NCBI GenBank assembly: GCA_965637545.1
Contig: OZ281499.1
Span: forward strand, 7,812,001-7,876,000
DNA from: Phallusia mammillata
Taxonomy: Eukaryota
Direction of reading: 5' to 3'
DNA: 64,000 nt
Shown: positions 13,589-42,399 of the stretch, in pieces
Position numbering within the stretch: the stretch's first letter is position 1
How the letters are laid out: the number at the start of each line of letters is the position of its first letter
Notes under the pieces: generated by a model
What the model saw: only the letters and a program-made list of their open reading frames with translations
Told to the model about the DNA's origin: nothing
The model's database searches: none
Program-made: the position numbers and the translations under genes

Positions 13589-14727
13589 ATGTCATCTTTG
13601 ACCGGACTTATTTGCGCCTTGCTTGCTGCGTTGCTTAGTGCGCTCATGGGATTTCTGGTGAAGTATTTGAAAGAGGCAAGCATGGAGATGGCACTCATGT
13701 TCCGTTTTTCGATTCAGTACTTTTTCATGCTGCCAATTATGCAATGGAATGGAAGGACTTTTGTTGATGAAAAACCACGATTAAACGTATTGATACCAGT
13801 GGTAGGATTGGGCGGAGCATTTTCGTCGTTTTGCTTTTACCTAAGTCTTAGCTTCTTAACGATCAGCGATGCTACCGTCATTGGTTGGGGGTCCATCGGC
13901 TTGATAGGGATATTTGCATTCTTTTTTCTGAAGGGTAAGTTGAAAAACGAAACAAAATAAACCTTTGATTTTACTGATATAGAATTAAAACACACTATTG
14001 GATCGTGTCTTTTTGTTGTTTGGAGTTATGTTAGTTATTTTACGTGTGAAATACCGTTGATCATCTGCACATAAAAAACAAAACATTGTCCGATTTAGTA
14101 ATTAACCATAAAAATACCCTAAAAATAGGTACGAAGTTAATAAAAATTATTTTTTTGTATCTTTGTTTAGAACCATGCGGTTTTGTGGAAATACTTTTTT
14201 CTGCCGCGGCCCTAGTTGGGCTTCTTCTCATATCTCGCCCATCGTTCATCTTCGGACATCAAACACATATTCAAAAAGAAACAAACCGACCAATTGGAAT
14301 CTTACTTGCCATAGGTGCAATGTTTTTCAACACTGTTTCTATCGTAGCTTTGCGAAAACTTGGCAAAGACCTCCACTTCAGTATTTCACTTGTATATCAC
14401 GCATTTTGCGCAGTCGTTGTAACGATCTTGTCGTTGTATTTCAGAAACGCTTACGCACTTCCCTGCACTTCTGACGTCATATACATGACGACATCTGGTG
14501 TTTCGGGATTGTTATATACAGCATTTTTGACCGTGGCGCTACAGTTAGAGTCGGCTGGCCCTGTTACAATAGTAACCAGTAGCCAAGTTGCAATTACTTT
14601 CCTTCTCGAGTATTTCTTTTTGGGTGTTGTACCTTCAACGTTCAGCCTTGTTGGCGCGGGTTTGGTGGTGGGCAGTACCATAGGTTCTGCAGCAGTTAAA
14701 ATGCGACGGGCCAGTAACGAAAACTAA
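13589..14727 (+). CDS. SLC35G/EamA (drug-metabolite transporter superfamily) protein, 300 aa, paralogue 1
   Basis: Exons 13589-13934 and 14171-14727 (AAG G|gtaagt ... tttag|AA CCA; phase 1); 903 nt open. About 10 hydrophobic segments; motifs VGLLLISRPSFIFG, LRKLGK..HFS and ALQLESAGPVTIV..SQV resemble SLC35G1. Confidence 0.88.
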
Positions 14728-15189: not shown

Positions 15190-17445
15190 AAAACAAACAG
15201 TAATAATACAATACAATGTTTGCAATTTAATTCAGTACGTAAAAGAAGAAGAAGCAGAAACGCAGTAACAACACAATTATACAATAAGCGAAAATGCAAG
15301 GATATTTTTGAACGAATCGTTGTGTGCGCACGATCGAACAACTAGCTGGAGGGCAAATTAGCGACAAGAAAAGAAGGCCAGCAGCAGTGCGTAGGTTGAT
15401 TGTGTGATTGGGCACAGTTAATCAATGCAAAAACAACGTAAGGCATGTTTACAACAGCACGTGGGCGGGGGCAGCATGTAATGACGGAACCATTTTTTTT
15501 TTAAATGGAGCATATCTGCTAACAAGAAACTGTTTTACTTTCTTTTTAAAAGTGTGTAAGCCCACATGTTTAATGTTTTCTGGCAGAATGTCCCACATTT
15601 TAGAACTGGCAAAGAATATGGTATTTTGTGCTCGTTTGGTCGAAACGCGGTGCAAAAAGTATTGACCTCTTGATGCCAGTCTGGTGTTGTGTTGGTGAAT
15701 GTGCTGGATTGGTGTTAAAAATTGGTGAAAAGTTTCAGGTAATGCCATGCTTTTAAAAAGAAACACAAATTTAACTACCTCTGTGAAGTGTAGGGCCTAT
15801 ATCTTTCAGCTTTACAATGTTTGTTTTTTTGTACAGGGGAGCTGGTGATGTCCGATATGGGCTATGAGTAATGATTTTTAAAATCCTATTCTGAAGGGAT
15901 ATTAATGGCTGCAAAGTAGTTTGATTAGCAAAGCCCCAAGCTATTAATCCATGCAGGAGGTATGGGTGTACCAATGAATGGTATATAGCTCGGAGGGTTG
16001 GAAATTGCATGAGATGTCGTAGCTTTGCAAGTATGCCAGCACTGCGACTAATTTTTTTGCGAAGATATTGTATGTGGGGTTTGAAATTTAAATTCTTGTC
16101 AAAAAACACACCAAGGTATTTCACTGCTTGCACCTCTGCAATGGAGTCATGTCCGTATGTTATTTTGAAAGCGGAATGAAGAATGTGTTTGGTTTTGGTA
16201 AATATCATAAACTTTGTTTTTTTTGTAGTTTAATGGCAATTTATTCACCCGCATCCATTGGTCAACCTTGCCAAATTCATTATTTACATTTTTTTGCAGT
16301 ACAGAGGAGTTGCTGTCTGACATCCAGAGAAATGTGTCATCGGCAAACAATCTTGTATTAAATTTTGATGCTGTCGGTAGGTCGTTGATGTACAATATAA
16401 AAGCAAAGGACCCAAAATGGATCCTTGGGGAAGGCCACAAGTTGTATTTAGACAGCAAGATTTGTAGTTTGGATGGATGTAAGTGATTTGCTTCCGATCT
16501 GTCAGGTAACTTCTGAAAAATTTCAGTATGTGACCTCTAAAACCATAGCAACTTAACTTTTGCAGCAATATAGAATGGTCAACAGTGTCGAATGCTTTTG
16601 CCAAATCCAAAAAAATTCCACAGGTGATGTGATCATTGTCACAATTTAATACAAGTTTGTCGTGAATTTCTGCTATAGTCAAATTTGTTGAGTGTTTGGG
16701 TCGGAAGCCATGTTGGAACTTAGTAATCAGTTTAAACTTGTTCAGGTAATTTGTCATTCTGTTGTATATTAGTCTTTCAAATACTTTTGTCACAATTGGT
16801 AAGAGGGATATTGGCCTGTAGTTGGACATTTCCTGGGAATTCCCACCTTTGAAACAGGGAATGACCTTTGCCAGTTTGAGACAGTTTGGATAGACACCGG
16901 AAAAGACACATTCATTGAATATGTCACAAAGCAAGGGAGATAAGTATGGGGCTGCAAGTTTGAGTAATTTAGCAGGTATATCATATGGCCCTGGTGCCTT
17001 CCTTTCATTTAATGCCAATATAGTATTATACACCTCATTTGTGTCTATAGATATAAATGAAAATGAATTGGATGTTGGATGGAGAAGAAATGATATTGGG
17101 GATTGTGGTGTAGACAGAATTTTGCTTGCCATGTTGCTGCCAATTGTCGAAAAGTAAGTGTTGAATGCATCAGCTATCAATGTGGGATCTGTAATGTGTT
17201 GTGAGTTATTAATAACTTTTGTGATGTTGTTTTGTTTGTTTGTGTGAGGTGATATTGCGTATTATCTGCCAGGTTTTTTGGGGATTGTTTTGGTTAGCTG
17301 TAAAAAGGTTTGTGTAGTGAAGTTGTTTAGATTTTGTTATAACATTTTTAAGCATTATTGACAAACAATATTTTTCTTTGCGGTGCACTTTACAAATTGA
17401 ATGTAGATATAAATGCACGCATGCATTTCATCATTTAGCTTTTAA
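15190..17445 (-). mobile_element. 5'-truncated LINE (CR1/L2/Crack-like) with frameshifted ORF2 reverse transcriptase
   Basis: Consecutive minus-strand ORF pieces: KTWQII, ADAFNTYFSTIG, KAPGPYDIP, NYRPISLLP, QHGFRPKHST, FLDLAKAFDTVDH, GLPQGSILGP, LFADDT, KYLGVFFDKNLNFKPHI, HNTR. Several frameshifts; no endonuclease domain. The 3' end lies in a tattg/ttc-rich simple tract, so boundaries are approximate. Confidence 0.93.
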
Positions 17446-17850: not shown

Positions 17851-18878
17851 TTATTTTCGCAAACGATTCCTCCTTATATTGATTAGTGTCAAAGAAATTG
17901 CACTTAACAAAATAAGAGCAGCGCCGACAACACTGCAGAAGGTACAACACCCAAAAAGAAATATTCCAAAAGAAATACGATACTAACAGGGCCAGCGGCT
18001 TCTTTCTGGATAGCCACAGTCAAAAAAATCATATAAAGCAATCCACAAAAAGCAGACGACATCATAAATAGAAGGTCGGTGGTGCACGGTATGAAGAAAA
18101 CATTGTTAAAATACATTGAAATGAGTGACGTAATCAACATACACAGTGCTTGATAAAAAGCAGTAATGCTGAAATGAACTTTCTTTCCCAGTTTTCTTAC
18201 CGTCACTATACAGACCGCTGTCAGGAACATTGCAGTAACGGAAAGTATGATTCCGATGCCGCTATTTGGGTTATTTCCTTCATCTGTTTGACCCCCGAAC
18301 ATAAACGATGGACGAGAAATGAACAAAAGTCCTAAGACTGTTGTTGCGGTAAAAACTACTTCAATGATTCCACAATGCTCTGAATTAAACGTGACACATT
18401 TAAGCAAACGACATTGTAGAACAACTGTTCATCACACAAAGGTATATTGTACATTTTTAACAGTTGTATTGACTTACCTTTTAGAAAAAATACACGAGAA
18501 AATTCCCACCAATGCCACTGAACCCCATGTAATAACTGTGGAGTCACTTACTGACAGGAAAATCAGGCTGTAGAAATAAGCGTAAGATGCAACAGCACCG
18601 CTCAAACCGACGACAGCCAGTAACGCGTTGTGCCAAAGTCTGTGTTCAACAAACGCGATTCCTTTCCATTGCATTGCCGGCAGCATAAAAATGTACAAAA
18701 CAACACAACGAACCAGCAGCGTCTGGTCCATGCTCGCTTGCTTAACGTACTTGACAAGAAAGCCCATCAGAGAAGAAAAGACTGAAGCCAACAGGGCATA
18801 TAAGAATCCCAGCCGAGATCTTACACTTTGCATTGTGTTTGACATTTTAGTCCATTCTCCGTTTGCTACTCCATTCAT
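17851..18878 (-). pseudogene. SLC35G/EamA paralogue 2, probably pseudogenised
   Basis: Exons 18878-18478 and 18379-17851, with the same intron position as paralogue 1. An extra T in the run at ~18485-18490 shifts the donor to phase 2 while the acceptor needs phase 1. Eight codons (TSSQVAIT) are missing at ~17975. A further frameshift lies at ~17935, after which the homologous tail VVGAALILLSAISLTLINIRRNRLRK* continues in another frame to 17851. Confidence 0.72.
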
Positions 18879-27000: not shown

Positions 27001-28880
27001 AGGAAGTGACCGATTAACAACTTAATGAGAACGTTGTTTTAAATGTTATTGACAACATCAACGAATGTGACTGTTGGTTAAAGAGACGTATTTTTCCATT
27101 TCTTTACAGTGCGTACCCACTTTTCATGGTATTAAACTTAATAAACAAATAGTGATATAACCGGTGCAAAGACAAAGATTTCAATATTCTTTCCTAAATG
27201 ATTAGTGTTGTCAACAACAGCACAGTCTTGTCCACTACCTATTGATTCACATCTTGCTGCATGGAACCGCAAAAGTCGGAGCAGTACCTAGAAACGTAAG
27301 GCCTACCTTGCCTGCAGTAAATCCAATCCGCGTGGTATCGTGCGTCATTGTAGAATAACGTGCCATCATTTGGCTATGGGGAAACCACGCCGCGTTCATT
27401 AAAGTTTACGCTGGACCCGTTTACACTCTTTGCATAGAACCCTGGCCTTTTCCCCACATGTAAGGTATATCTCGACAGATTTTTTGGCGCGCGGCGCGTA
27501 CGTTATGCTTGTGACGTATGCGCGTCCTTTGATAGTTCACCAGACTTGTTTGACTTTTCCTTTATCCGCTTTTCAGTTAGAGTCTTAGAGATGATTTGCC
27601 CAGCGCGTAGAACAGCTGTGTTCATGTTTTACCAGACCGTTTTTAAACTAATGTACAAGGCACAACAGAAATTTAAATTGCGTTTATCTATGCGTACCGC
27701 ACAAAAATATTAGAGATGTTTTTCTGTCTTCATAAAGTTCAACATTATTATATAGGTGATGAATTGTTTGTTCAGGATTAGGACTTTCAAATTAATAGCT
27801 GATAGGGGTTTCAACTGTTTTAAGAACCTATTTGTCACCTTTGTTTATTCTCGGGTTGCTTTTGCACAATTTCTGCAAGGGGGTCCGTATAAAGCAAAAG
27901 AGCAAATAGGGGCAAGTTTTCTCGAACGACTGAGTCACGGACGATTAGTTTTTACGCGATGATAGAAGTCTCAGGCTCACCAGACCATTGCAACTAGTGA
28001 TGCTCGGAATATGTCTTATAATTGACTGATCTATGCTGTGTCCCCTCCAAAAAGTCATTAGCTGTAAAAATGTTAAAAAGATTTTTAGAGAAGTTTAATT
28101 GAGTTCAGAACTGAGATGACGTGGTTTTTTGTCCGGTTTTGATGTTTGTGTTAGTAAGATTAAAAGAATAACAAAGTGACTGTTTCCTGACTAAACCTAT
28201 TAGCTTGGATCTACATGGGATTTTAATATCTGTTGAAAAAAGTTTCTTTTAAAAGGAACGTTGGTTTTAAAAATAAGTCATGCAATATTGAAATTGTAGG
28301 AAATAACCTAAAATAGCTGAGTCAGCTTATTTTACGATATTCTACTGGTATCTAGTTTCATCGTCGAAATTTTGATTAATTTTAATCTAACCCTCGTAGT
28401 TTTCAAGTCATTAATAAGCGCGTTTTGTTTGGTCTGTGCACTATCGCGTGTCAATAAATAATTATCATTTGCTGCCAGTTCTTCATGCGCTCTTGTTGCC
28501 AGTTAATGGCTCTTCACAACAATTCAACGAAATTGAAGAGCTATGATCTTTAAAGTTTTGTTTCTATTTTGAGAAGTGTTAGAAGTCCACTGAATAGACT
28601 CGAGCTTTGATACGTGTTGATGAGATGCAAATTTAATGTCCCACTGCAGCCAGCAATTATGTAAATTTTTCCAATGGTCCAGCAGCACTACACCAACGAG
28701 TAGAAACTAGGTTTTATCATAAAAAGTTGGGAGTTTGCTTTTACACTTTCTATGTGGGTTTTTTAAACTAGCTCACCATGGAAAGAGATTTAACTGGGTT
28801 TTAACGACGGTGACTAATGAATCGTGTTTGGTTGCAGAGGTTGCACAATAAAAGTTTTAGTGTTACGTAAAACTGACATT

Positions 28881-31800
28881 ATGAAGATCGTCGTTGCTGG
28901 AATGCCGAAGACCGGTACCAAGTCCATCAAGGCGGCGTTGACCATGCTGGGCTACACTGTGTACGATGCAGAAGAGAACTTTGACAATCTTCATGAGGAT
29001 TGGACCAAGATCATGACCGTTGGCGGTAGCCCAGAGGACTTTCGACGGATGTACAAGGATGTGGACGCAACATGCGATGTACCAGCTTGTTACTACTGGG
29101 AAGACATGCACAAAGCTTTTCCTGACGCAAAGGTGTGTCTATATAAATACGTGGCAATGGTCATTAAAGTTTGTATCATAAATTGCAACAAAAAGTCTTT
29201 ATTGAAAACTTTACTCAGTTGATTAATTAATTATTGTAAATAGCTAAAAGTTGCATTTTTGCCTTCGCCCCTACGCTGTCTAGTCTATTGCACAAAACAT
29301 GATCTACCGGATAAACGATATCGCGAAGCAATGTGTGAAGTGCTGACATTTTGTAGCCTGTTGTATTGTATGTTTATTTGATGTTTAGCGGAATAGATAA
29401 GTCAAACCATAATCCGACATGGAACCGCATATTTCGCAGTAAATGCGAGCCTTTTCAAAACACACACTTTAAGCACTAGTGGTGACAAAGTAAACCCGGT
29501 ATTTTATTAAATTGTGATTGTCTTGCGATCAACTGCTTAGGATTCTTTAAAAACACTTTGTGGAACAAAATATTGCCACCGGCCTTGAGCAGCATCTATG
29601 ACTGGATCCTGTTCAACAATCAGTCTCTAAACTTTGCTAGCCTGCTGCGGAAACATTAATCTCTCCTTTCAGGGGACATTTCATTGCCTTTGCGTGCGAC
29701 GGATACGCTACTCTATAAATAGAAACCCGTGGTAAATGCGGTTGAGCCCTTTGTCGTCTAAGCGTGGCAGAAGTTATAAATACGTTTGCCACTAGAAGAA
29801 AGAGTAAAGTTTCTATCCGTGCGAACGGTCAAGGTCACTTCGGGTCAAAGACGGCGAGAAGTTATTTCAAACCAGGCACGTTACCTCATAGCAGAAATAT
29901 TTTTTCCTTATTGTCAACAAGTTCCAAAAACCGTGGTCTTGAGATAAACACTTGTTTGATAAGCAATAGCGTTGCAATCACACAGACACAAAAAATACCG
30001 TTCTGATCATTGAATTCATGCGTTGGCAATTCATCGGGAAATCAAACAAATTGACTCTAACATACACATTCACCGCTGCTTTAAGCTGAAAGCACGATAC
30101 GTGCACTCGAATCTGGACTTAATGGCGGATGCTTAAATCGTTTGAACTACCATAACAGGAATTTAATCCTACCACGTTACCAAATTCGAGTTTCCCATAA
30201 GAGGATTTTATAGTATATCCGGTGTGCATGTAACAATATAGTTCAGGTCAGGAATAGGTAGCCAACTCAGGAATACTTCAAAAATCAACTTTCCAATCCA
30301 TTTAACCCTTGCCGCACGGTTTTACAATTTAGGCATTTGACATGGGCCACAAACAGTCAAAATCAAAAAACTAAGAAGATGCCCTAGTAATACAGCCGAG
30401 GTCTTGTGTAACACCATTACTGGCATACCAAAGGTCTTGTACATATACGCTGTTGTACCACGTCCTAGCATTTCCAAGAAAGGATTATAGGTCAAACGCT
30501 TGCACTATGTGTCTAGAACGGACGTTGAGAAGGCAGCGGCGTCTCATCAAAAGACTGTTGTGTGCCCGCAAATGCCAAGCCTAGCAGTTTGGGTTAAGAC
30601 TTGTGGTTCATGCGGTTATTGTGTTGTTTGCTTTGATATGTGCGCTTGTACACGAATTGCTGCTAAACCATAATTGTACTTAGTCTATTTAACAATATCA
30701 CGCATTTGGAACAAATTTTAGTAAATGTTTTTTTAAAGCTTGGAAGTTTTACTGTGGGTCGAAGTTTTTGAGTTTTTGCAACTATTAATCGAATTGTTTG
30801 TTGTATGAACAGGCATTTTATAACTGTTATTTCAGCAAACATAAAGGTTAACCGAACCTAAAATTACACTTTATGTTTTTCTACAAATCAGGGTACAGAG
30901 TCCTATAGCAATTCAGCACCTTAACCACAGAAAGTTTGTATTTATTCTCCACCCAGTATAAAAGAAAAGAACCACACGGAAATAAATCTAGTCGGCAGCT
31001 CGTGTGTCTTCCTTATCCACATGCTGCTGCACACATTTACGCTATCCTACACGTTTACCTGATTGAAGCGATGCTAAATGACATTCAGGGAAATTACTCA
31101 CACCACAACTAATATCCGTCAAAAATATCTGAATATCGATAAGTGGCGCAAAGGTTCCTGTTTAATAATTCTGCACTTCATGTCACCTACCGACAACAGG
31201 CAAGTTTTGTCCGATTTTATTTGGTCCAACGCTTTTTTACACCCAGTTCACATATCCGCAAAATTGTGCGGTCAAAACAAACCCTCTGCCCCGCCCTAAA
31301 TCTGCAAAGGAGTTGTATGGTGGAACACAAGAAAACACACACAAAATACACAAAATTTTGACAGTAATTTCTGTTTGTGTTTTCTTTTGACAATTTGAAC
31401 ATCTAACATTGAACAGAACAGTAACATTGAACATCTGTGCAAAAATCTCGCTATAAATCTTTTGTTGTCATCAATTAATTATCAATGCAAAGTTTCTACC
31501 CTCTTTTACAGGACTTGTGTTTGGTAAATTTTCAGCCCAAATTTGAATGTTCGGCCAAATCTGCTCGAGCTTATCTATGTGATTCAATTGATGCATTTTT
31601 GATAGATCGTGGGATGTTAATACACGAAAACCCTCCAATGTCATTCCACATCACCTTTTGTAACATTTAAACAGAAAATATAGGGGCACGTTTGATACAA
31701 AGACAATAATTAGCCAACTAACTGCGTTCATAGTTGTTTTGTGAGGCTTCAAGAAGCATTAAAGTTCGAAACCAAAATCAAAAAGTCGAAATTTCGGTGC

Positions 31801-34800: not shown

Positions 34801-35515
34801 CCTGTTTGTTGGGAAACCTTATGCTGACCTCACATGACTGTCTGTTGTCTCTAACGCAGTCGCTTGCTCGGCTGTTGACAGTTAAGCATTCTGCATCTAT
34901 GACTCAGCTAGCGGTTAACCGGGGTGTTTTGTAATGTGTTTACTTCTTGTAGGGCGAAGGTGATTAGAAGTGTAATGTAAAAGGGCATCTTAGAAGAAAT
35001 AGTTGTAAGCAGGCGCCAAACTACCTGAACCCTTTTTTTTCAAAACAAAACCCGAACGAGGCCAGTTGGTAGAATTGGAACACGAATGAAACCAAGTCAT
35101 GCCCGAATCAAGTCCGTTTTTCTTTAAAACCGATCCATACCGGCCGACCTAGTTTACAACCCTGTCGGAAGATAAATAGAAAGCAAATTTTTTTAACATC
35201 TTAATTCCATCAATAATAGATTACCTAATATACTTATCAATTTATTTCCAACAGGTGGCACCAAAAGATAAGCTCCTCGTGTACAAATGCTCGGAGGGCT
35301 GGGAACCGCTGTGTTCTTTTCTTGGCTGCCAAGTTCCCGAAGAAAGTTTTCCTCACAAAAACCAACGAGGAAGCATCCTTAAGGAAGAGCTGAGCAACCC
35401 AAATCCCGGTTACCGGAAAATCCAACGCGAAATCACCGTATCTCTTTGCGCGGTCATGTGTGGCGTTGGCTACATTGCATACCGACTTGTACAGGCTTCT
35501 TTTATGTTTGTCTAA
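28881..35515 (+). CDS. Sulfotransferase-domain protein (Sulfotransfer_4 / P-loop family) with C-terminal TM anchor, 255 aa
   Basis: Exons 28881-29132, 32624-32771, 34623-34729, 35255-35515; phases 0,1,0; 768 nt open. Motifs MKIVVAGMPKTGTKS, DVPACYYWEDMHKAFPDAK|ILLMVRESEDEWW, AYRNHNARVLQ|VAPKDKLLVY...EGWEPLCSFLG..VPEESFPHKN, then hydrophobic ITVSLCAVMCGVGYIAY. Confidence 0.9.
29826..29847 (+). promoter_or_regulatory. Candidate nuclear-receptor response element (DR0+DR4) in intron 1 of the sulfotransferase gene
   Basis: CGGTCA-AGGTCA-cttc-GGGTCA: three RGGTCA-like half-sites in direct orientation, including TCAAGGTCA. Confidence 0.4.
32177..32514 (+). mobile_element. Non-autonomous hAT (Charlie-type) MITE, family A, copy 2
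   Basis: gagtggttcttaacc...ggttaagaaacactg with gattaa(g/a)g-like flanks; inverted homologue of 2865-3223 (shared ggggtacgaagca, tgcatgcattcaac, ggccattgtagacagggggtacgag). It ends 109 nt upstream of sulfotransferase exon 2. Confidence 0.85.
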
Positions 35516-36304: not shown

Positions 36305-36665
36305 CAGTGGCGTAGCCAGGGAGGGGCCAAAGGGGCCATGGCCCCTCCCAAATTTTCAAAGTTGTACATTGATAAACTTTAATTTAGTGTAGTTTCGTCC
36401 CTCATCATTGTGGTTTCGTCTATCAACTATCAAAGGAATATATAAATTACTAAAAATGACTTTTGTCACCAAATTGTAAGCCGAAATCCATGCTTTTTAT
36501 AATTATGCAGACATGGAATAAATCAATAAAGCGTTTGGCTGTCCCGTCGAACCACCGTTTGGCAGGTCGCCTGTTTGGTAAAAGCACGCCGAGCGTTTGC
36601 AAAAAGTTGTATAAGACCACAAATTATTTGGCCCCTCCCAAAAGTTTTGGCTGCCTACGCCACTG
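36305..36665. mobile_element. Non-autonomous hAT element with CAGTGGCGTAG TIRs
   Basis: TIRs cagtggcgtagcc / ctacgccactg; perfect 8-bp TSD ccgtccag (36297-36304, 36666-36673); subterminal ggcccctccc repeats. Confidence 0.93.
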
Positions 36666-37016
36666 CCGTCCAGGGTATTTTTTTCTCCACAATAGTGACT
36701 GACATGGTTTCCTTTGCACAAATTTCAATTTTAAATATTTTTACTGGATATTCTTACATTATCTACAGCATTAAAACGAAAGATGTCACCTTATTTAGAG
36801 CCAATAAGATTTTTATAAATACACTAATGAGAACATTTTCATGCTGTCAGAAAATTAGGTAATTTGTTTGGCACCGTACCAAACTTATTTCCGACGAAAA
36901 TCATATGTTTATTCATGCAAAATATTTCCATGGAAACAGTATGCACTGGGAAATTCCCTGATTAAGACAAGAACCAAACTTAAGAAAAATTCCTTAGTTT
37001 TTCTATTCTTTACACT

Positions 37017-40000
37017 ATGGAAACCGAAGTTAAAGCTAAAAGACGCCATGGCACTAAAAGCAACAAGAAAAAGCGAGAAAGTGAGTTCAGTGAAATTCAG
37101 ATTGTAAAATATTTCAGCCTTTTTTACCGCAGAACGAAAAAAGGGAGAACCAAATCTAGTAAAACCAACAGAACATGTTAAGAAAAACAATCGGCCAAAC
37201 TACTTCATAGGAACACGCTTTTGTAACCCAGAAATTGTAGGTAAATGATCTTCTGAGTCATAGTCTATGACTCTATAGTACAAATAGTTGCTTATACTGA
37301 ATACACCTAATTAATTTTATTTAGTGACATTGTTTTAAGGTTAGTTGAAATTTCATGGGTCCAACTACAATTATGTTTAATAAACTTCAGGAAAAATACT
37401 CGCGGTACAGGAACATGTAAAATCACAACTACACTTTTTAGCAAAAGCATGTGTGCCAATTGAAACTACTCATGTAACTTTGGCTGTTATGCATTTGGAG
37501 GATGATTGTGCAGTAGAAAAGTAAGAAGATTGTTTCTTCCTATAGTAACTACCACAATATGTTTTAATATTTAGGGCAAAATTATGTCTTAAAATGCTTA
37601 TCACACATAAATCATTGCAAAAATAATTTGATAAACACCTCTTAATTTGGCAGTTATTTGTTGTAGAGCCAGTACAATCCTGCAAGAATGTAAACACAAA
37701 ATATCCAATCAATTGGAAAATACAGATTTTGAAGTCAAAGTAAAGGATCTAGGACACTTCAGACATCAAGTTTTGTTTGCCAAACTCGAGGAAGATGACA
37801 ACTTTCAGAAATTAGTAGAAGTTGCACGTACATACGAATTTGTGTGTGTAGCATGTATCTCTGAAAATTGTACAACTGTGTAACAACTAAAACTGAGTTG
37901 ACATTTTGTGTATTTTTGCTGGTTTGAAAGGTTTTTATCTCCATTTTTTATTATCCAGAATTACTGCAAAGTGAATTTCAAGGTTTTGTTCGGGAACGAG
38001 ATAATTTCCAACCACACCTGACAATACTTAAACTATCAAAGATGAGGCACACTGGAAAAAATAAAGTAAGATTTCAGCAAACATATTAAAAAAAGAAAGT
38101 ATCTTAGAATGGTTTCAAATGGATTATTATTTGATGGCATCAAGTTTAACTGATACTGATTTCCAGATAAAGAAAATCGACTCTGGTCTATACAGAAACT
38201 TTGCCAAGCTACATTTTGGAAAACAATCCATTCAAAGCATTGAATTACTTTCGATGGTGAAGAAAAAACAACCAGATGGGTATTACTTCAGTGAGTCAGG
38301 AATCTCCATTGGTAAGCTGGACATTTTCACAATATAGAATGCATAGCATTACCCATTGTGAAGGTGTGCTGTTAAGAATATATATGTTTTAATTGGATGG
38401 ATTGTACTGTAAGTCACAAAAAGACAACAACTTCACTAAATACGGGAAATAAATAACTTCTTTCTGGGACAATCCCAAATAGCACTGAAACTCAAATATC
38501 AAATGATGAAATACTGTATCCAGTACTCAAGTAGAGTAAAAAAGCCAAAACACTGTTGTTCTTGGCTCAAGTCTCTTATACCAGATAAACCTAATTTTTG
38601 AAAACAATTTAATTTCAGGGGAAAATTCAAGTTCAAACAGTACTTGGTCCATAGATGATTGGGCTGAAAGTGTGGCTGTATGTTGCATTACAACAGCACT
38701 GATGACCCATGAATACAACAACCAATCAAATCTTAATGCATTATTTGCTGATAACCTTGCTACTAATATTATTAACAGTTGTCTGGCAAGCACCACAAGT
38801 ACGTTCAAACTTGATACTTAGAAGTGTGTATTTTTTTCTATTTTGTATGACATCTGCTATCTTGGTGTTATAAGACATTAAGAAAAGTTTTGTGAACACT
38901 CTTTTGCATGAACTAGCTAAAGTCAAGTCAAAACCACCAAAACCGCATTAGAAAATGAACATATGTAAACAACACCAAATTCAATGTCAAAAAAACAGCC
39001 AAGTTTGGTGAGAAAACCACTCCACTTTATAAAACTGTGTTAAGTAGCCTTTAGGTGGCGCACACAACTCACCACCCAAAACAGTAGCAGAAGCTAGAAA
39101 GGCAAAGTGGCAACAAAGCGAACAAAACTTTACACGTGACAAGCTGTCACCATGGCCGGTATTCGTGTTTATCCCAAAGTTCAACCCGGTGCAACCGTGC
39201 ATTCAAGTTGCGTACCGATGCTTTAAAGGCAATTGGTTACTTTGGTCGGCTCAGGAAATCCTGACACGTCGTGCCTATTGATATATTTGACAGACCTACC
39301 CGAACTCCCATGACTTGTGTACTGTTTGGGTGGGTGGGATATTACGTATCGAACCAAGTCTGTAAGACGTGTTAGGTGATCTTGTTGTTGCCTATTTTTG
39401 CGGTATGAAGTCATTGCATTTGGTAGGTTTTATTTTCGTGCTGTGCGACTGGGTAGGTGCCAGACAAAAGATCTAAATATGAAATGCACCTATTTTTGTA
39501 ACCCTTTTTGCACGCAATATGCATTTTTGCTTGGTCTCGTGTGTAAGTCGGTGAACTTTAATGACTGTGGGATTCAATCACAATCAAAATCAAGACAACG
39601 GAAATGACAAAGCATTGCCTTTGTCTCAAAATCTGTCACCACGATTTTTAAAATATTATATCGGCCTATGTTTTTGCAATTGCAAAATCTTTGAGGCATA
39701 ATAAGTTCAGAAGAAATACGGCTTCGGCTCTTTGGGCATTATTAGTAACAAAATTTGAAGTAGTTACAGCCAAATAGTACGTAATAAACGTTTCGCATTA
39801 TTTAAATTCCCTTTTTTTAATTTTCCCTTCCTTAAATAAGTTTAATCCATCTGTTCGGTTCAACCCATTATTTTAAGTTTACATTCAAAACACCACTTAA
39901 AATTTACTGGTCTGCAAGCTTCAAAAGGTAAGAACCACTGTTCTACCATATTTATATTGTATATTTTTGACTTTTTTAAAAAACATTACGTCATTCGTGC

Positions 40001-40320
40001 TTGAGATTTTTAGATACGTATATACATTTCGCCTTTACAGCATTATCAGTATCTGACTTAATGTTATTCATTAACTTATATCAATTGACATATATTATAG
40101 TCTTCTACCATCAAGCAATTAGGTGGGAGATTGTAGTTTAAAGTACCATATATTTTTGGTTTGATTTGTGACAAATAAATGAAAAAAATTTAAGAAAATG
40201 TTGAACATAGGTGCCGCTGGAATGGAAGAAAAACTGCAGAAGTTTCGAGAAACAATCCGAAGCCAAGACGTTTCCAAGAGAATCGAGCAGGAAATCGACT
40301 TACAGCCTCCAGACGTTTAA
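37017..40320 (+). CDS. AKAP7: A-kinase anchor protein 7-like: NLS + 2H (2',5'-phosphodiesterase) domain + PKA-anchoring helices; ~334 aa in this model
   Basis: Exons 37017-37080, 37133-37240, 37391-37520, 37667-37827, 37959-38065, 38167-38311, 38619-38798, 40211-40320; phases all compatible. Motifs RPNYF, THVTLAVMHL (HxT 1), FQPHLTILKLSK (HxT 2), IELLSMVKKKQPDGYY match AKAP7. The 3' end is uncertain: read-through of exon 7 stops at 38821. Confidence 0.8.
39927..39940. mobile_element. Isolated Charlie-type TIR (right end)
   Basis: ggtaagaaccactg is the reverse complement of a CAGTGGTTCTTA(A)CC terminus; no partner end was found. Confidence 0.4.
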
Positions 40321-41577
40321 AAAGCTCCCTGTTGCCACATTGCGGATAGTAATAGTCTAGTTCGAGTGTAGTATGTGGTCAATTCCCCACAGATTTCATC
40401 GACTGGTAGAAGGCTGCGGTTGAAACAAACTATCATTGAAGGAGACTTCGTTTTTGCATGACAAAACACATTTTGGATTTGAAGTCGGTATTACACAAAT
40501 TAGATCCTTTTTAACTTTGACTAATTATATCCCGTGTCGTAGTGCCTAGGTTCGATTGTTTCCATTTCATACATTAAGCGTATAATTAAAACAAACGTAA
40601 TGTCCACAAAAGGCGTTCCATATAACTAACTAAATGTTGCACAAGCGAGCTTTTTCTAAATGCCAACTTTACGTAAATGCCTTACTAATATTTATATGGT
40701 TAAATATATAAGTTATAAGGCAAATACATCGTATTATTTGTAATGATAAGAACTTCAAGTCATAGTGATAAAAAATTTAAGTCATAACCCCCAGTGCTGT
40801 CGCTTTGTTATGGTGTAGTTATCAAACAACCTAAACGTATTGTCACGGTCATTACGTTAGATGTTTGTCATGTGGTAAATTTTCCATTGTGCCAAATGTT
40901 TGCTATTGGCGGGCACCAATTTAAATGTGTTTCCTGTGTGGTAGTGCGTGTTAGGCTACTTTGCTCGATATGGTTACACATTTAAGGCCTTTCGTTTGTC
41001 AAACGTTAAGGGAAAAAAACAGCTGTGGCAATGTAGGCCACGTTGGATTTCATTTCGATTCTACACATACCTTACAGATAACTAGTGATCGCAAAAGTAG
41101 CGTAATTACAAATCAAGGTAATTGTAAATTGGTTTACGAATCTTCGAATAAAACAACAACCAAGTAAAAGCTAAAAAAGTGCTAGTTTGTAGACTTTCAG
41201 AATAGAAATGTCCTTACTGGGACAAACGTACATCAGCGTTTAACAACATTTTAATGTTTGCCTTCAAAGCTGTTAAGTACCAACTACAAAGCTTCAATAA
41301 TAAAAGTCGTCGCGCCGTAAAATTTGTCATCACCATTTCTGAAGCGTTTGATGGTAAAGTTTTACAACAAGTTTAGTGGAAAATTCAAGCCTTCAGCTGC
41401 ACATTGTCGAAAGGTTTTGCGGAATAACACCAATTCAGTTGTTCTGATTTCTTTTTAAAGTTAAGGACAAATTCGGAATTTAAGGTTGTGTTTTCGAAGT
41501 CATATTTGTCTGTTGTAAGTTAAATTTGTTTCTTGAAAGTGGTTCATTGTAAGATTGTTGTATCAACTTCGTTAACA

Positions 41578-42399
41578 ATGGACCCTGCTGCGCAACGAGA
41601 CCAAATGATTCAATTCGTTTTTCAAAACATCAAATCAAAAATGCACGACAGTAAGTAAATTTATGTAACCATTTTGAATGTTGTGTTGGTAATGTGGTAA
41701 TAAAAGGAACTGATTTGTTTGTTAATCTGCATATTTTGTTGGTTTATGATCATTTTGGTGTTGAAACGGACTCCTATGTTACAATTTCGTGCGAAATATA
41801 TGAATTGAGTGTCATTAACATTTGTTACCTCAAAGGTTTTTGTAGCGATATTACTAGTGGTAATTTGACTTCCCGAACAGTATGTTATGTTTAGTCCAAC
41901 TAATGAACGGTGGTCAAAAGTCAAGTAAGTTATAAATTACTTTACAGAGGTGACAACGTGGAATACAAACATGATGATTGCCATCTCGGTTTTATTGGTG
42001 CTTGGATTTGCATTGTCTGTGTGAGTATAATAAATACACGAATTTCAAATACACAATAGAAGTCGAAATTACGTAAAATTGACCAAAATTTAACAAATTC
42101 CGCTGGATGGTAAATTGACGCGGGAAAAACAAGTTCGTTTTTTACTTTGATTTTCAACATCTGCAGGTGTATTTTGGTTTGACGTATTAGAATTGGTTTG
42201 AGTTTTCGAGTGTTGGTTCACGGTTTAAATTTGTAAAGTAAATATTTTATTTTATTACCAATAGCGGACTAAAACATATGCCAAATAAATATGCGTTTTT
42301 TTTATCAGATTGTTTGAAAGGAAACAAAGGCGAGAGATGGAAGCTCGACTAAAAAAGGAAAATGAAATAAAGCTGGATGTAGATGAATCCTTAGCGTAA
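41578..42399 (+). CDS. Unannotated 78-aa single-pass membrane microprotein
   Basis: Exons 41578-41650, 41948-42020, 42309-42399 with strong sites (A|gtaagt, tttacag|, GT|gtgagt, tttatcag|) and matching phases 1 and 2. Protein: MDPAAQRDQMIQFVFQNIKSKMHDKVTTWNTNMMIAISVLLVLGFALSVLFERKQRREMEARLKKENEIKLDVDESLA*. Confidence 0.75.

What the first reader, a model, noticed from the sequence alone, without database searches (positions are those of the whole stretch)
38619..38798. Symmetric 180-nt AKAP7 exon encoding two tandem RI-type PKA-anchoring helices
Seen: the exon (aatttcag|GG ... ACA A|gtacgt, phase 1-1) encodes IDDWAESVAVCCITTAL (38651-38701) and NALFADNLATNIINSCL (38735-38785), 28 residues apart. 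Both fit aromatic-A-x-x-[LV]-A-x-x-[IC]-I-x-x-[AC]. Established: this is the pattern of RI-selective anchors such as RIAD (LEQYANQLADQIIKEA), whereas vertebrate AKAP7 has a single, RII-preferring helix (LVRLSKRLVENAVLKAV). Inference: the tunicate gene couples a 2H phosphoesterase to a bivalent type I PKA dock on a skippable cassette, so splicing could switch between a free phosphoesterase and a double PKA-RI scaffold. The two helices may come from an intra-exon duplication. This exon is not in the ORF track.
Basis: partly seen in the sequence, partly recalled or inferred. Interest (0 to 1): 0.75.

Follow-up and report, generated by a model that had tools for sequence, protein, structure and literature searches.

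The report
Tunicate AKAP7 exon with twin docking-type helices
A sea-squirt gene related to vertebrate AKAP7 really does splice in a 180-base exon encoding two helices that look like protein kinase A docking sites, so this anchoring function may be older than vertebrates, but nobody has tested whether the helices bind.

Summary
Exon 38619-38798 (+) has the stated splice sites, phase 1-1 and peptides. Spliced RNA contigs from four runs in three studies join it to both neighbouring exons. It is exon 7 of an 8-exon, 334-codon AKAP7-type 2H phosphoesterase gene (Pfam PF10469; best solved relative AKAP18/AKAP7).

Both segments fit the published AKAP docking pattern: aromatic-Ala at positions 1-2 and hydrophobic residues at 5, 6, 9, 10, 13 and 14. 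The pattern occurs only 4 more times in 128,000 six-frame positions, and no shuffle out of 200,000 gives two copies. Helix 1 lies where the vertebrate AKAP18 anchoring helix lies, about 13-16 residues after the 2H domain. Helix 2 has almost the same docking face as the RI-selective peptide RIAD.

Three parts of the interpretation are not supported:
- No skipping junction appears in the contigs, so the exon looks constitutive.
- No similarity supports an intra-exon duplication.
- Helix 1 is barely amphipathic.

Binding, and RI versus RII preference, remain inference. No homologue of the exon was found, but the tools could not reach full-length orthologues, so conservation is untested. Published work states that the Ciona AKAP7-like protein lacks a PKA-binding domain. 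This is an interesting, testable lead, not an established anchor.

The parts
37017..37080 (+). Exon 1: start codon and a basic, NLS-like N-terminus (METEVKAKRRHGTKSNKKKRE)
   Evidence: ORF and GTGAGT donor. Joint 37080>37133 in spliced contigs of X1, X2 and X5.
37133..37240 (+). Exon 2: start of the 2H domain (…RPNYFIGTRFCNPEIV). The acceptor is at 37133, not 37118.
   Evidence: joints 37080>37133 and 37240>37391. Translation.
37391..37520 (+). Exon 3: first catalytic H-x-T motif (HVT)
   Evidence: Pfam PF10469, E 1.1e-4. Joints.
37667..37827 (+). Exon 4: core of the 2H domain
   Evidence: Pfam PF10469, E 9.9e-9. Joints 37520>37667 and 37827>37959.
37959..38065 (+). Exon 5: second catalytic H-x-T motif (HLT)
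   Evidence: Translation. Joints.
38167..38311 (+). Exon 6: end of the 2H domain. It aligns to AKAP18 residues 241-287.
   Evidence: Pfam PF10469 profile positions 163-207 of 208. PDB 2vfk/5jj2/3j4q, E 1.7e-8.
38619..38798 (+). Exon 7 (the finding): 180 nt, phase 1-1. It encodes an S/N-rich linker, helix 1, a linker and helix 2.
   Evidence: Joints 38311>38619 (X1, X2, X17) and 38798>40211 (X1, X2, X5, X17).
38651..38719 (+). Helix 1 (IDDWAESVAVCCITTALMTHEYN). Its docking-face pairs are WA, VA, CI and AL. It is the positional counterpart of the vertebrate AKAP18 anchoring helix.
   Evidence: AF2 single-sequence helix over residues 11-33, pLDDT about 60-66. Motif. Hydrophobic moment 0.12. Position plus PMC3814001.
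38735..38788 (+). Helix 2 (NALFADNLATNIINSCLA). Its docking-face pairs are FA, LA, II and CL. Its face, A-L-A-I-I-C-L, compares with A-L-A-I-I-A-T in RIAD.
   Evidence: AF2 helix over residues 39-56. Motif. Hydrophobic moment 0.34.
40211..40320 (+). Exon 8: the charged C-terminal tail (…MEEKLQKFRETIRSQDVSKRIEQEIDLQPPDV), the stop at 40318-40320, and then at least 1 kb of 3' UTR
   Evidence: An X5 contig runs unbroken from 40211 to 41319.

Best explanation
Exon 7 is a constitutively included, penultimate coding exon of the tunicate orthologue of AKAP7 (AKAP18 long form). The protein has an N-terminal basic nuclear-localisation-like stretch and an intact 2H phosphoesterase domain. After a 13-residue Ser/Asn-rich linker come two alpha-helices separated by a short Asn-rich linker.

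The most likely function of these helices is the one that the single C-terminal helix has in vertebrate AKAP7. They would dock into the groove of the dimerisation/docking (D/D) domain of PKA regulatory-subunit dimers, tethering PKA to the phosphoesterase. Helix 2 is the better candidate and resembles RI-preferring or dual-specificity anchors. Helix 1 occupies the position of the vertebrate helix but is less amphipathic.

Shown: the gene model, transcription and splicing, the motif and its non-random occurrence, helix prediction at low confidence, and positional equivalence to the vertebrate helix.

Inferred: any binding, its isotype preference, and bivalency.
For: - All seven introns, including both flanks of exon 7, are confirmed by GT..AG joints in contigs from three studies.
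- The gene is AKAP7-type: PF10469 hits on exons 3, 4 and 6, two HxT motifs, and exon 6 is most similar to AKAP18 delta / AKAP7 gamma at E 1.7e-8.
- Both segments carry hydrophobic residues at positions 2, 5, 6, 9, 10, 13 and 14 and an aromatic-Ala at 1-2. PMC12083921 describes exactly this as the docking face and the RI determinant. The motif is rare in the window (4 other hits in 128,000 positions) and never occurs twice in 200,000 shuffles.
- There is no Pro or Gly in either segment, and AF2 predicts helices at residues 11-33 and 39-56.
- Exon 6 ends at the equivalent of AKAP18 residue 287-288. In AKAP18 a 9-residue linker leads to the anchoring helix at 301-317 (PMC3814001). The predicted tunicate helix 1 starts at +13 and its WA pair lies at +16/+17. 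The vertebrate helix starts at +14 and its first pair lies at +17/+18, a shift of one residue.
- Helix 2 has a hydrophobic moment of 0.34, close to the 0.32 of the AKAP7 core, and shares five docking-face identities with RIAD.
- D/D domains of PKA R subunits are conserved in urochordates (PMC3508976).
Against: - Nothing here tests binding.
- Pfam's AKAP7 RI/RII-binding model (PF10470) does not hit exon 7 or exon 8 even at E up to 10.
- PMC3508976 reported that the Ciona AKAP7-like protein lacks that domain.
- Helix 1 has a hydrophobic moment of only 0.12, with V, C and M on its nominally polar face. It starts with W rather than F/Y.
- Neither helix has a hydrophobic pair at positions 17-18. 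Both polar faces lack the charged residues usual in anchoring helices.
- No homologue of the exon was detected, so conservation of the hydrophobic face is unknown: phmmer against 1.84 billion representatives gave 0 hits, the word search gave none, and PDB gave nothing relevant.
- The AF2 confidence is low (pLDDT 61).
- AKAP-type motifs are degenerate and prone to false positives.
Confidence: 0.5

Rival explanations
1. The two helices form a structural helix-loop-helix. They would pack against each other, against the 2H domain, or against a second copy as a dimerising four-helix bundle, and have nothing to do with D/D domains. The AKAP-like periodicity would then be simply that of any helix with one buried face.
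For: Helix 1 is hydrophobic on nearly all faces: mean hydrophobicity 0.49 and moment 0.12. This suits a buried helix better than a solvent-exposed docking helix. The polar faces carry Asn, Ser and Thr but almost no charges. PF10470 gives no hit and no homologue was found. AF2 gives a helix-loop-helix with a short linker.
Against: The double 'two hydrophobic, two other' pair pattern with small residues (Ala) at the second position and an aromatic-Ala start is more specific than general amphipathicity. The location coincides with the vertebrate anchoring helix (PMC3814001). The solved vertebrate 2H domain is complete without such helices (2vfk covers the domain).
Confidence: 0.28
2. The helices dock to D/D-type domains other than those of PKA. 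These would be R1D2/R2D2 proteins such as ROPN1L, SPA17 or CABYR of cilia and sperm flagella, so the gene is not a PKA anchor in the strict sense.
For: Vertebrate AKAP18 binds the SPA17-ROPN1L heterodimer at 82 nM (PMC8339350). AKAP28 serves such partners with a poorly conserved helix (PMC12083921). The unusual uncharged polar faces could reflect a different partner.
Against: Nothing in the sequence points specifically to these partners. The aromatic-Ala motif is described for RI (PMC12083921).
Confidence: 0.1
3. Exon 7 is a regulated cassette exon whose inclusion or skipping switches the protein between a free phosphoesterase and a bivalent, strictly RI-selective scaffold that arose by intra-exon duplication.
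For: The exon is 180 nt and phase 1-1, so skipping keeps the frame (G|GT gives Gly). Both helices start aromatic-Ala. SKIP sets a precedent for tandem RI helices (PMC12083921).
Against: No skipping joint appears in four runs from three studies, and all contigs that bridge the region include the exon. Contigs do drop rare isoforms. There is no duplication signal (the register is ambiguous). Helix 1 has W rather than F/Y and is weakly amphipathic. The hydrophobic pair at positions 17-18 is missing.
Confidence: 0.1

Closest known systems
Vertebrate AKAP7 long isoforms (AKAP18 gamma/delta)
   Same: The layout matches: basic N-terminus, 2H phosphoesterase domain with two HxT motifs (PF10469), a short linker, then a C-terminal amphipathic helix. 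Exon 6 aligns to AKAP18 residues 241-287 at E 1.7e-8. Tunicate helix 1 starts within one residue of where the vertebrate helix (301-317, PMC3814001) starts.
   Different: Vertebrates have one helix, on the terminal exon, recognised by Pfam PF10470 and with a charged polar face (LVRLSKRLVENAVLKAV). The tunicate has two helices on the penultimate exon, gets no PF10470 hit, has aromatic-Ala starts and Ala at position 6, and has uncharged polar faces.
'AKAP7-like' proteins of Ciona and other invertebrates (Johnson et al. 2012, PMC3508976)
   Same: This is the same kind of gene: the AKAP7_NLS/2H domain without the Pfam RI/RII-binding domain, in a tunicate.
   Different: That paper concluded from the absence of the Pfam domain that these proteins probably lack PKA binding. 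Here a motif-level and positional match to an anchoring helix is present. I could not check whether Ciona has the same exon.
SKIP (SPHKAP) and the distal helix of AKAP220
   Same: These are type I PKA anchors with F/Y-Ala at helix positions 1-2. SKIP carries two RI-selective helices in one protein (PMC12083921).
   Different: They are unrelated proteins. Their helices lie far apart in large proteins. They are placed as vertebrate innovations, and their binding has been shown experimentally.
RIAD, a synthetic RI-selective disruptor peptide
   Same: Helix 2 (FADNLATNIINSCL) and the RIAD core (YANQLADQIIKEAT) have identical residues at five docking-face positions (A, L, A, I, I) and an aromatic-Ala start.
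   Different: RIAD is an engineered peptide with a strongly charged polar face (moment 0.51 against 0.34). Resemblance to it does not show selectivity.
smAKAP
   Same: It is an RI-selective anchor whose Y/F-Ala start is required for RI binding (PMC12083921).
   Different: smAKAP also has an invariant hydrophobic pair at positions 17-18, which both tunicate helices lack (H-E and T-T).

Membership tests
AKAP7 / 2H phosphoesterase (Pfam PF10469, AKAP7_NLS) | Profile match to the AKAP7 2'5' RNA ligase-like domain | tested here: met
   Exons were searched separately. Exon 3 gives E 1.1e-4, exon 4 gives 9.9e-9 and exon 6 gives 3.6e-6, covering profile positions 18-58, 61-119 and 163-207 in order.
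AKAP7 / 2H phosphoesterase (Pfam PF10469, AKAP7_NLS) | Two catalytic His-x-Thr/Ser motifs | tested here: met
   HVT in exon 3 and HLT in exon 5.
AKAP7 / 2H phosphoesterase (Pfam PF10469, AKAP7_NLS) | The closest solved relative is AKAP18/AKAP7 | tested here: met
   2vfk, 5jj2 and 3j4q at E 1.7e-8 to 3.4e-8 with exon 6. 5jj2 is the top, weak hit for exon 4.
AKAP7 RI/RII-binding domain (Pfam PF10470) | Profile match to the domain | tested here: not met
   No PF10470 hit for exon 7 or exon 8 at E up to 10. HMMER's filters can drop weak matches.
AKAP7 RI/RII-binding domain (Pfam PF10470) | A helix directly after the 2H domain, behind a linker of about 10 residues | tested here: met
   (exon 6 equals residues 241-287) combined with PMC3814001 (linker 291-299, helix 301-317). 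The tunicate helix is predicted from +13.
AKAP anchoring helix (functional class) | Hydrophobic residues at positions 2, 5, 6, 9, 10, 13, 14 of a 14-18 residue helix, without Pro or Gly | tested here: met
   Both segments fit. The definition comes from PMC12083921.
AKAP anchoring helix (functional class) | Alpha-helical, amphipathic conformation | tested here: inconclusive
   AF2 without an alignment predicts both helices, but at pLDDT about 61. The moment is 0.34 for helix 2 and only 0.12 for helix 1.
AKAP anchoring helix (functional class) | Binds the D/D domain of PKA R subunits and is displaced by Ht31, AKAP-IS or RIAD | not testable with these tools
   This needs overlay, pull-down, SPR or a multimer model. 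No multimer prediction is available here.
AKAP anchoring helix (functional class) | Docking face conserved in orthologues | tested here: inconclusive
   No homologue of exon 7 was found. The length filter and the rule against joined models kept full-length orthologues out of reach.
Type I (RI)-selective anchoring helix | F or Y at position 1 and Ala at position 2 | tested here: met
   Helix 2 has F-A. Helix 1 has W-A: aromatic, but not F or Y. The criterion comes from PMC12083921.
Type I (RI)-selective anchoring helix | Hydrophobic pair at positions 17-18 | tested here: not met
   Helix 1 has H-E and helix 2 has T-T. PMC12083921 describes this feature as less stringent.
Type I (RI)-selective anchoring helix | Preferential binding of RI over RII | not testable with these tools
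   No binding assay or complex prediction is available.
Alternatively spliced cassette exon | Length a multiple of 3 with equal phases, so that skipping keeps the frame | tested here: met
   180 nt, phase 1-1. The skipped junction would read G|GT, which is Gly.
Alternatively spliced cassette exon | A skipping junction observed in RNA | tested here: not met
   No 38311>40211 joint in four runs. The inclusion joints are present in all that bridge the region. Contigs drop rare isoforms, so low-level skipping is not excluded.
Intra-exon tandem duplication | Similarity between the two halves beyond chance | tested here: not met
   22/54 nt are identical in register. Across all offsets, 379 of 500 DNA shuffles and 1436 of 2000 protein shuffles reach the best observed score. 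MAFFT chooses a different register.

The most novel reading that the evidence does not exclude
PKA anchoring by AKAP7 predates vertebrates. Under this reading the tunicate orthologue already tethers PKA through the helix at the vertebrate position and carries a second, RIAD-like helix. One 2H phosphoesterase would then hold two type I (or one type I and one dual) PKA holoenzymes. This contradicts the published placement of both the AKAP7 anchoring helix and the RI-selective anchors at the base of vertebrates (PMC3508976, PMC12083921).
Probability: 0.15. Interest if true: 0.65.

Novelty: new variant of a known kind. Interest (0 to 1): 0.5.

Why it matters
Two evolutionary studies place the origin of the AKAP7 PKA-binding helix, and of RI-selective anchoring in general, at the base of vertebrates. 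They treat invertebrate 'AKAP7-like' proteins as phosphoesterases without PKA binding (PMC3508976, PMC12083921). That conclusion rests on a Pfam profile and BLAST.

Here a transcribed tunicate exon puts docking-type helices exactly where the vertebrate helix lies. If even one helix binds an R subunit, the link between a 2',5'-phosphoesterase/AMP-binding domain and PKA is an older chordate feature. The 'FA motif' would then have an invertebrate example, and a natural tandem arrangement could be compared with SKIP. The test is cheap: two peptides and two D/D domains.

If the helices do not bind, the case becomes a useful caution about motif-based prediction of anchoring proteins.

Tried and rejected
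Searches for relatives of exon 7 all came back blank:
- phmmer against 1.84 billion representatives gave 0 hits at E<=1e-3, not even a self hit.
- The word-indexed search with exon 7 and with exon 6 found no candidate within the 0.55-1.75x length window.
- Metagenome loci with exon 7 and exon 4 gave pattern hits only, none confirmed.
- PDB sequence searches with the exon and with each helix gave only chance hits such as SidJ at E 0.28.

These blanks say little, for three reasons. A 59-residue, Asn/Ser/Thr-rich query needs about 41 bits in a library that size. Full-length tunicate proteins of about 280-340 aa fall outside the length window of exon-sized queries. I left out searching the joined 8-exon model.

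Duplication was rejected. The exon 2 acceptor is 37133, not 37118, and the exon 4 acceptor is 37667. I considered exon 8 as an anchoring helix and rejected it: it has heptad-like single hydrophobic residues and no paired positions. I considered a membrane segment or palmoylation-type Cys-Cys site for helix 1 but did not pursue it, because the hydrophobic run is too short for a membrane span. Earlier-findings look-ups gave nothing relevant to this gene.
Full report
**What is in the sequence.** A polypyrimidine/AG acceptor precedes 38619, a GTACGT donor follows 38798, and the exon is 180 nt. The open frame encodes ENSSSNSTWS-IDDWAESVAVCCITTALMTHEY-NNQSNL-NALFADNLATNIINSCLASTT. The two quoted peptides lie at the stated coordinates, and their aromatic residues are 28 residues apart.

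**Gene model.** I rebuilt the gene exon by exon.
- It has eight exons on the + strand: 37017-37080, 37133-37240, 37391-37520, 37667-37827, 37959-38065, 38167-38311, 38619-38798 and 40211-40320.
- Together they give 1005 nt, or 334 codons plus a stop.
- Pfam's AKAP7 2H domain (PF10469) hits exons 3, 4 and 6 in colinear order.
- Both catalytic HxT motifs are present: HVT in exon 3 and HLT in exon 5.
- The N-terminus is strongly basic, like the nuclear localisation signal of the long AKAP7 isoforms.
- Exon 6 aligns to residues 241-287 of AKAP18 (PDB 2vfk, 5jj2, 3j4q) at E about 2e-8.
- Earlier notes of this scan identify the genome as a tunicate.

**Is the exon used?** Yes. Twenty runs of one organism hold parts of the stretch. 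I laid four of them, from three studies, on 36500-41500. Their contigs skip all seven introns at GT..AG boundaries, so they derive from spliced RNA.
- The joint 38311>38619 is present in X1, X2 and X17.
- The joint 38798>40211 is present in X1, X2, X5 and X17.
- One 1199-nt contig (X2) runs through the coding region.
- The data corrected the exon 2 acceptor to 37133.
- They show a 3' UTR of at least 1 kb after exon 8.
- No contig joins 38311 to 40211.

The exon is symmetric, so skipping would keep the frame. On this evidence, however, it is a constitutive or at least dominant exon. Contigs cannot exclude a minor skipped isoform.

**Is the motif more than chance?** PMC12083921 defines the docking face of AKAP helices as positions 2, 5, 6, 9, 10, 13, 14 (and 17). 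It defines the RI determinant as F/Y-Ala at positions 1-2. I wrote this as [FYW]-A-x-x-Φ-Φ-x-x-Φ-Φ-x-x-Φ-Φ.
- Both copies in the exon match.
- The pattern matches only four other places in 127,996 six-frame positions of the window.
- Shuffles of the exon peptide give one match in 0.07% of trials and two matches in none of 200,000.
- Neither segment has Pro or Gly.
- AlphaFold2 without an alignment predicts helices at residues 11-33 and 39-56 of the exon peptide, at low confidence (pLDDT 61).

**How good are the helices as docking helices?** The two are unequal.
- Helix 2 (FADNLATNIINSCL) has a hydrophobic moment of 0.34, close to the 0.32 of the vertebrate AKAP7 core. Its face A-L-A-I-I-C-L is nearly that of RIAD (A-L-A-I-I-A-T).
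- Helix 1 (WAESVAVCCITTAL) has the right pairs (WA, VA, CI, AL) but a moment of only 0.12, because V, C and M sit on the other face. It starts with W rather than F or Y.
- Neither helix has the hydrophobic pair at positions 17-18 seen in smAKAP.
- Both polar faces are Asn/Ser/Thr-rich rather than charged.

**Position.** In AKAP18 gamma the central domain ends at residue 290. A 9-residue linker follows, and the PKA-anchoring helix is 301-317 (PMC3814001). Exon 6 ends at the equivalent of residue 288.
- Counting on without gaps, predicted helix 1 starts at +13 from residue 287, against +14 in the vertebrate.
- The pairs WA, VA, CI and AL fall one residue before the vertebrate pairs LS, LV, AV and AV.

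Helix 1 is therefore the positional counterpart of the vertebrate anchoring helix. Helix 2 is an addition with no vertebrate counterpart. This is the strongest argument that the resemblance is not accidental. It partly rests on published numbering rather than on an alignment I could compute.

**Duplication.** In the 28-residue register the two halves share 22 of 54 nucleotides. Across all offsets, 379 of 500 DNA shuffles and 1436 of 2000 protein shuffles reach the best observed self-similarity. That is what a generic four-residue periodicity gives, not homology. An ancient duplication cannot be excluded, but nothing supports one.

**Relatives.** No homologue of the exon was found in any search. 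[quoted passage not shown] The blanks are weak evidence. The query is short and compositionally biased. Exon-sized queries cannot reach full-length proteins in the word search.

**Literature.**
- Johnson et al. (PMC3508976) examined Ciona ESTs. They found an AKAP7-like gene without the RI/RII Pfam domain and concluded that the PKA-binding domain arose in basal vertebrates. They also note that R-subunit D/D domains are conserved in urochordates.
- Falcone et al. (PMC12083921) place AKAP18 and the RI-selective anchors at the vertebrate base. They identify the FA/YA start as necessary for smAKAP-RI binding. Together with a distal AF pair, it is sufficient to bias AKAP79 towards RI. They also note tandem RI helices in SKIP.
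- AKAP18 also binds the non-PKA D/D pair SPA17-ROPN1L (PMC8339350), which is the basis of one rival explanation.
- I found no paper describing helices in a tunicate AKAP7-like protein.

**Verdict.** The most likely reading (about 0.5) is that the tunicate AKAP7 orthologue carries D/D-docking helices at its C-terminus. Helix 2 is the best candidate, and helix 1 is the counterpart of the vertebrate helix. Strict RI selectivity, bivalency, the splicing switch and the duplication are unsupported or untested. The main rival (about 0.3) is a structural helix-loop-helix unrelated to PKA. If binding is shown, the finding moves the origin of AKAP7 anchoring before vertebrates. Until then it is a well-defined, cheap-to-test lead.

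Noticed in passing
window 36500-36666: A short stretch just upstream of the gene is covered by many high-depth RNA contigs with numerous variant letters and loose ends on both sides. It is probably a transcribed dispersed repeat rather than part of this gene.
   Followed up: no
window 39012-39198: Inside the intron between exons 7 and 8, one low-depth contig of run X1 matches with a 13-nt insertion. It is probably a copy of a repeat transcribed from elsewhere, not an extra exon.
   Followed up: no
window 38527-38808 (-): An antisense ORF of 93 codons spans the whole of exon 7 on the opposite strand. The GT..AG joints fix the transcript to the + strand, so this ORF is probably chance.
   Followed up: no
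window 40321-41319: The AKAP7-like mRNA has a 3' UTR of at least 1 kb: an X5 contig runs unbroken from 40211 to 41319. It ends about 260 nt before the 'three-exon microprotein' that another note of this scan places at 41578-42399. That candidate may need checking against read-through of this transcript.
   Followed up: no
window 15771-17180 (-): Two adjacent ORFs (298 and 145 aa) look like the reverse-transcriptase part of a non-LTR retrotransposon. They lie between two oppositely oriented genes for multi-pass membrane proteins of similar sequence (13589-14727 + and 17904-18878 -).
   Followed up: no
window 28824-29222 (+) and 35255-35515 (+): These ORF fragments have the look of a sulfotransferase-type P-loop protein (…GWEPLCSFLGCQVPEESFPHKN…). 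They are probably exons of the gene upstream of the AKAP7-like gene. I did not run them against Pfam.
   Followed up: no
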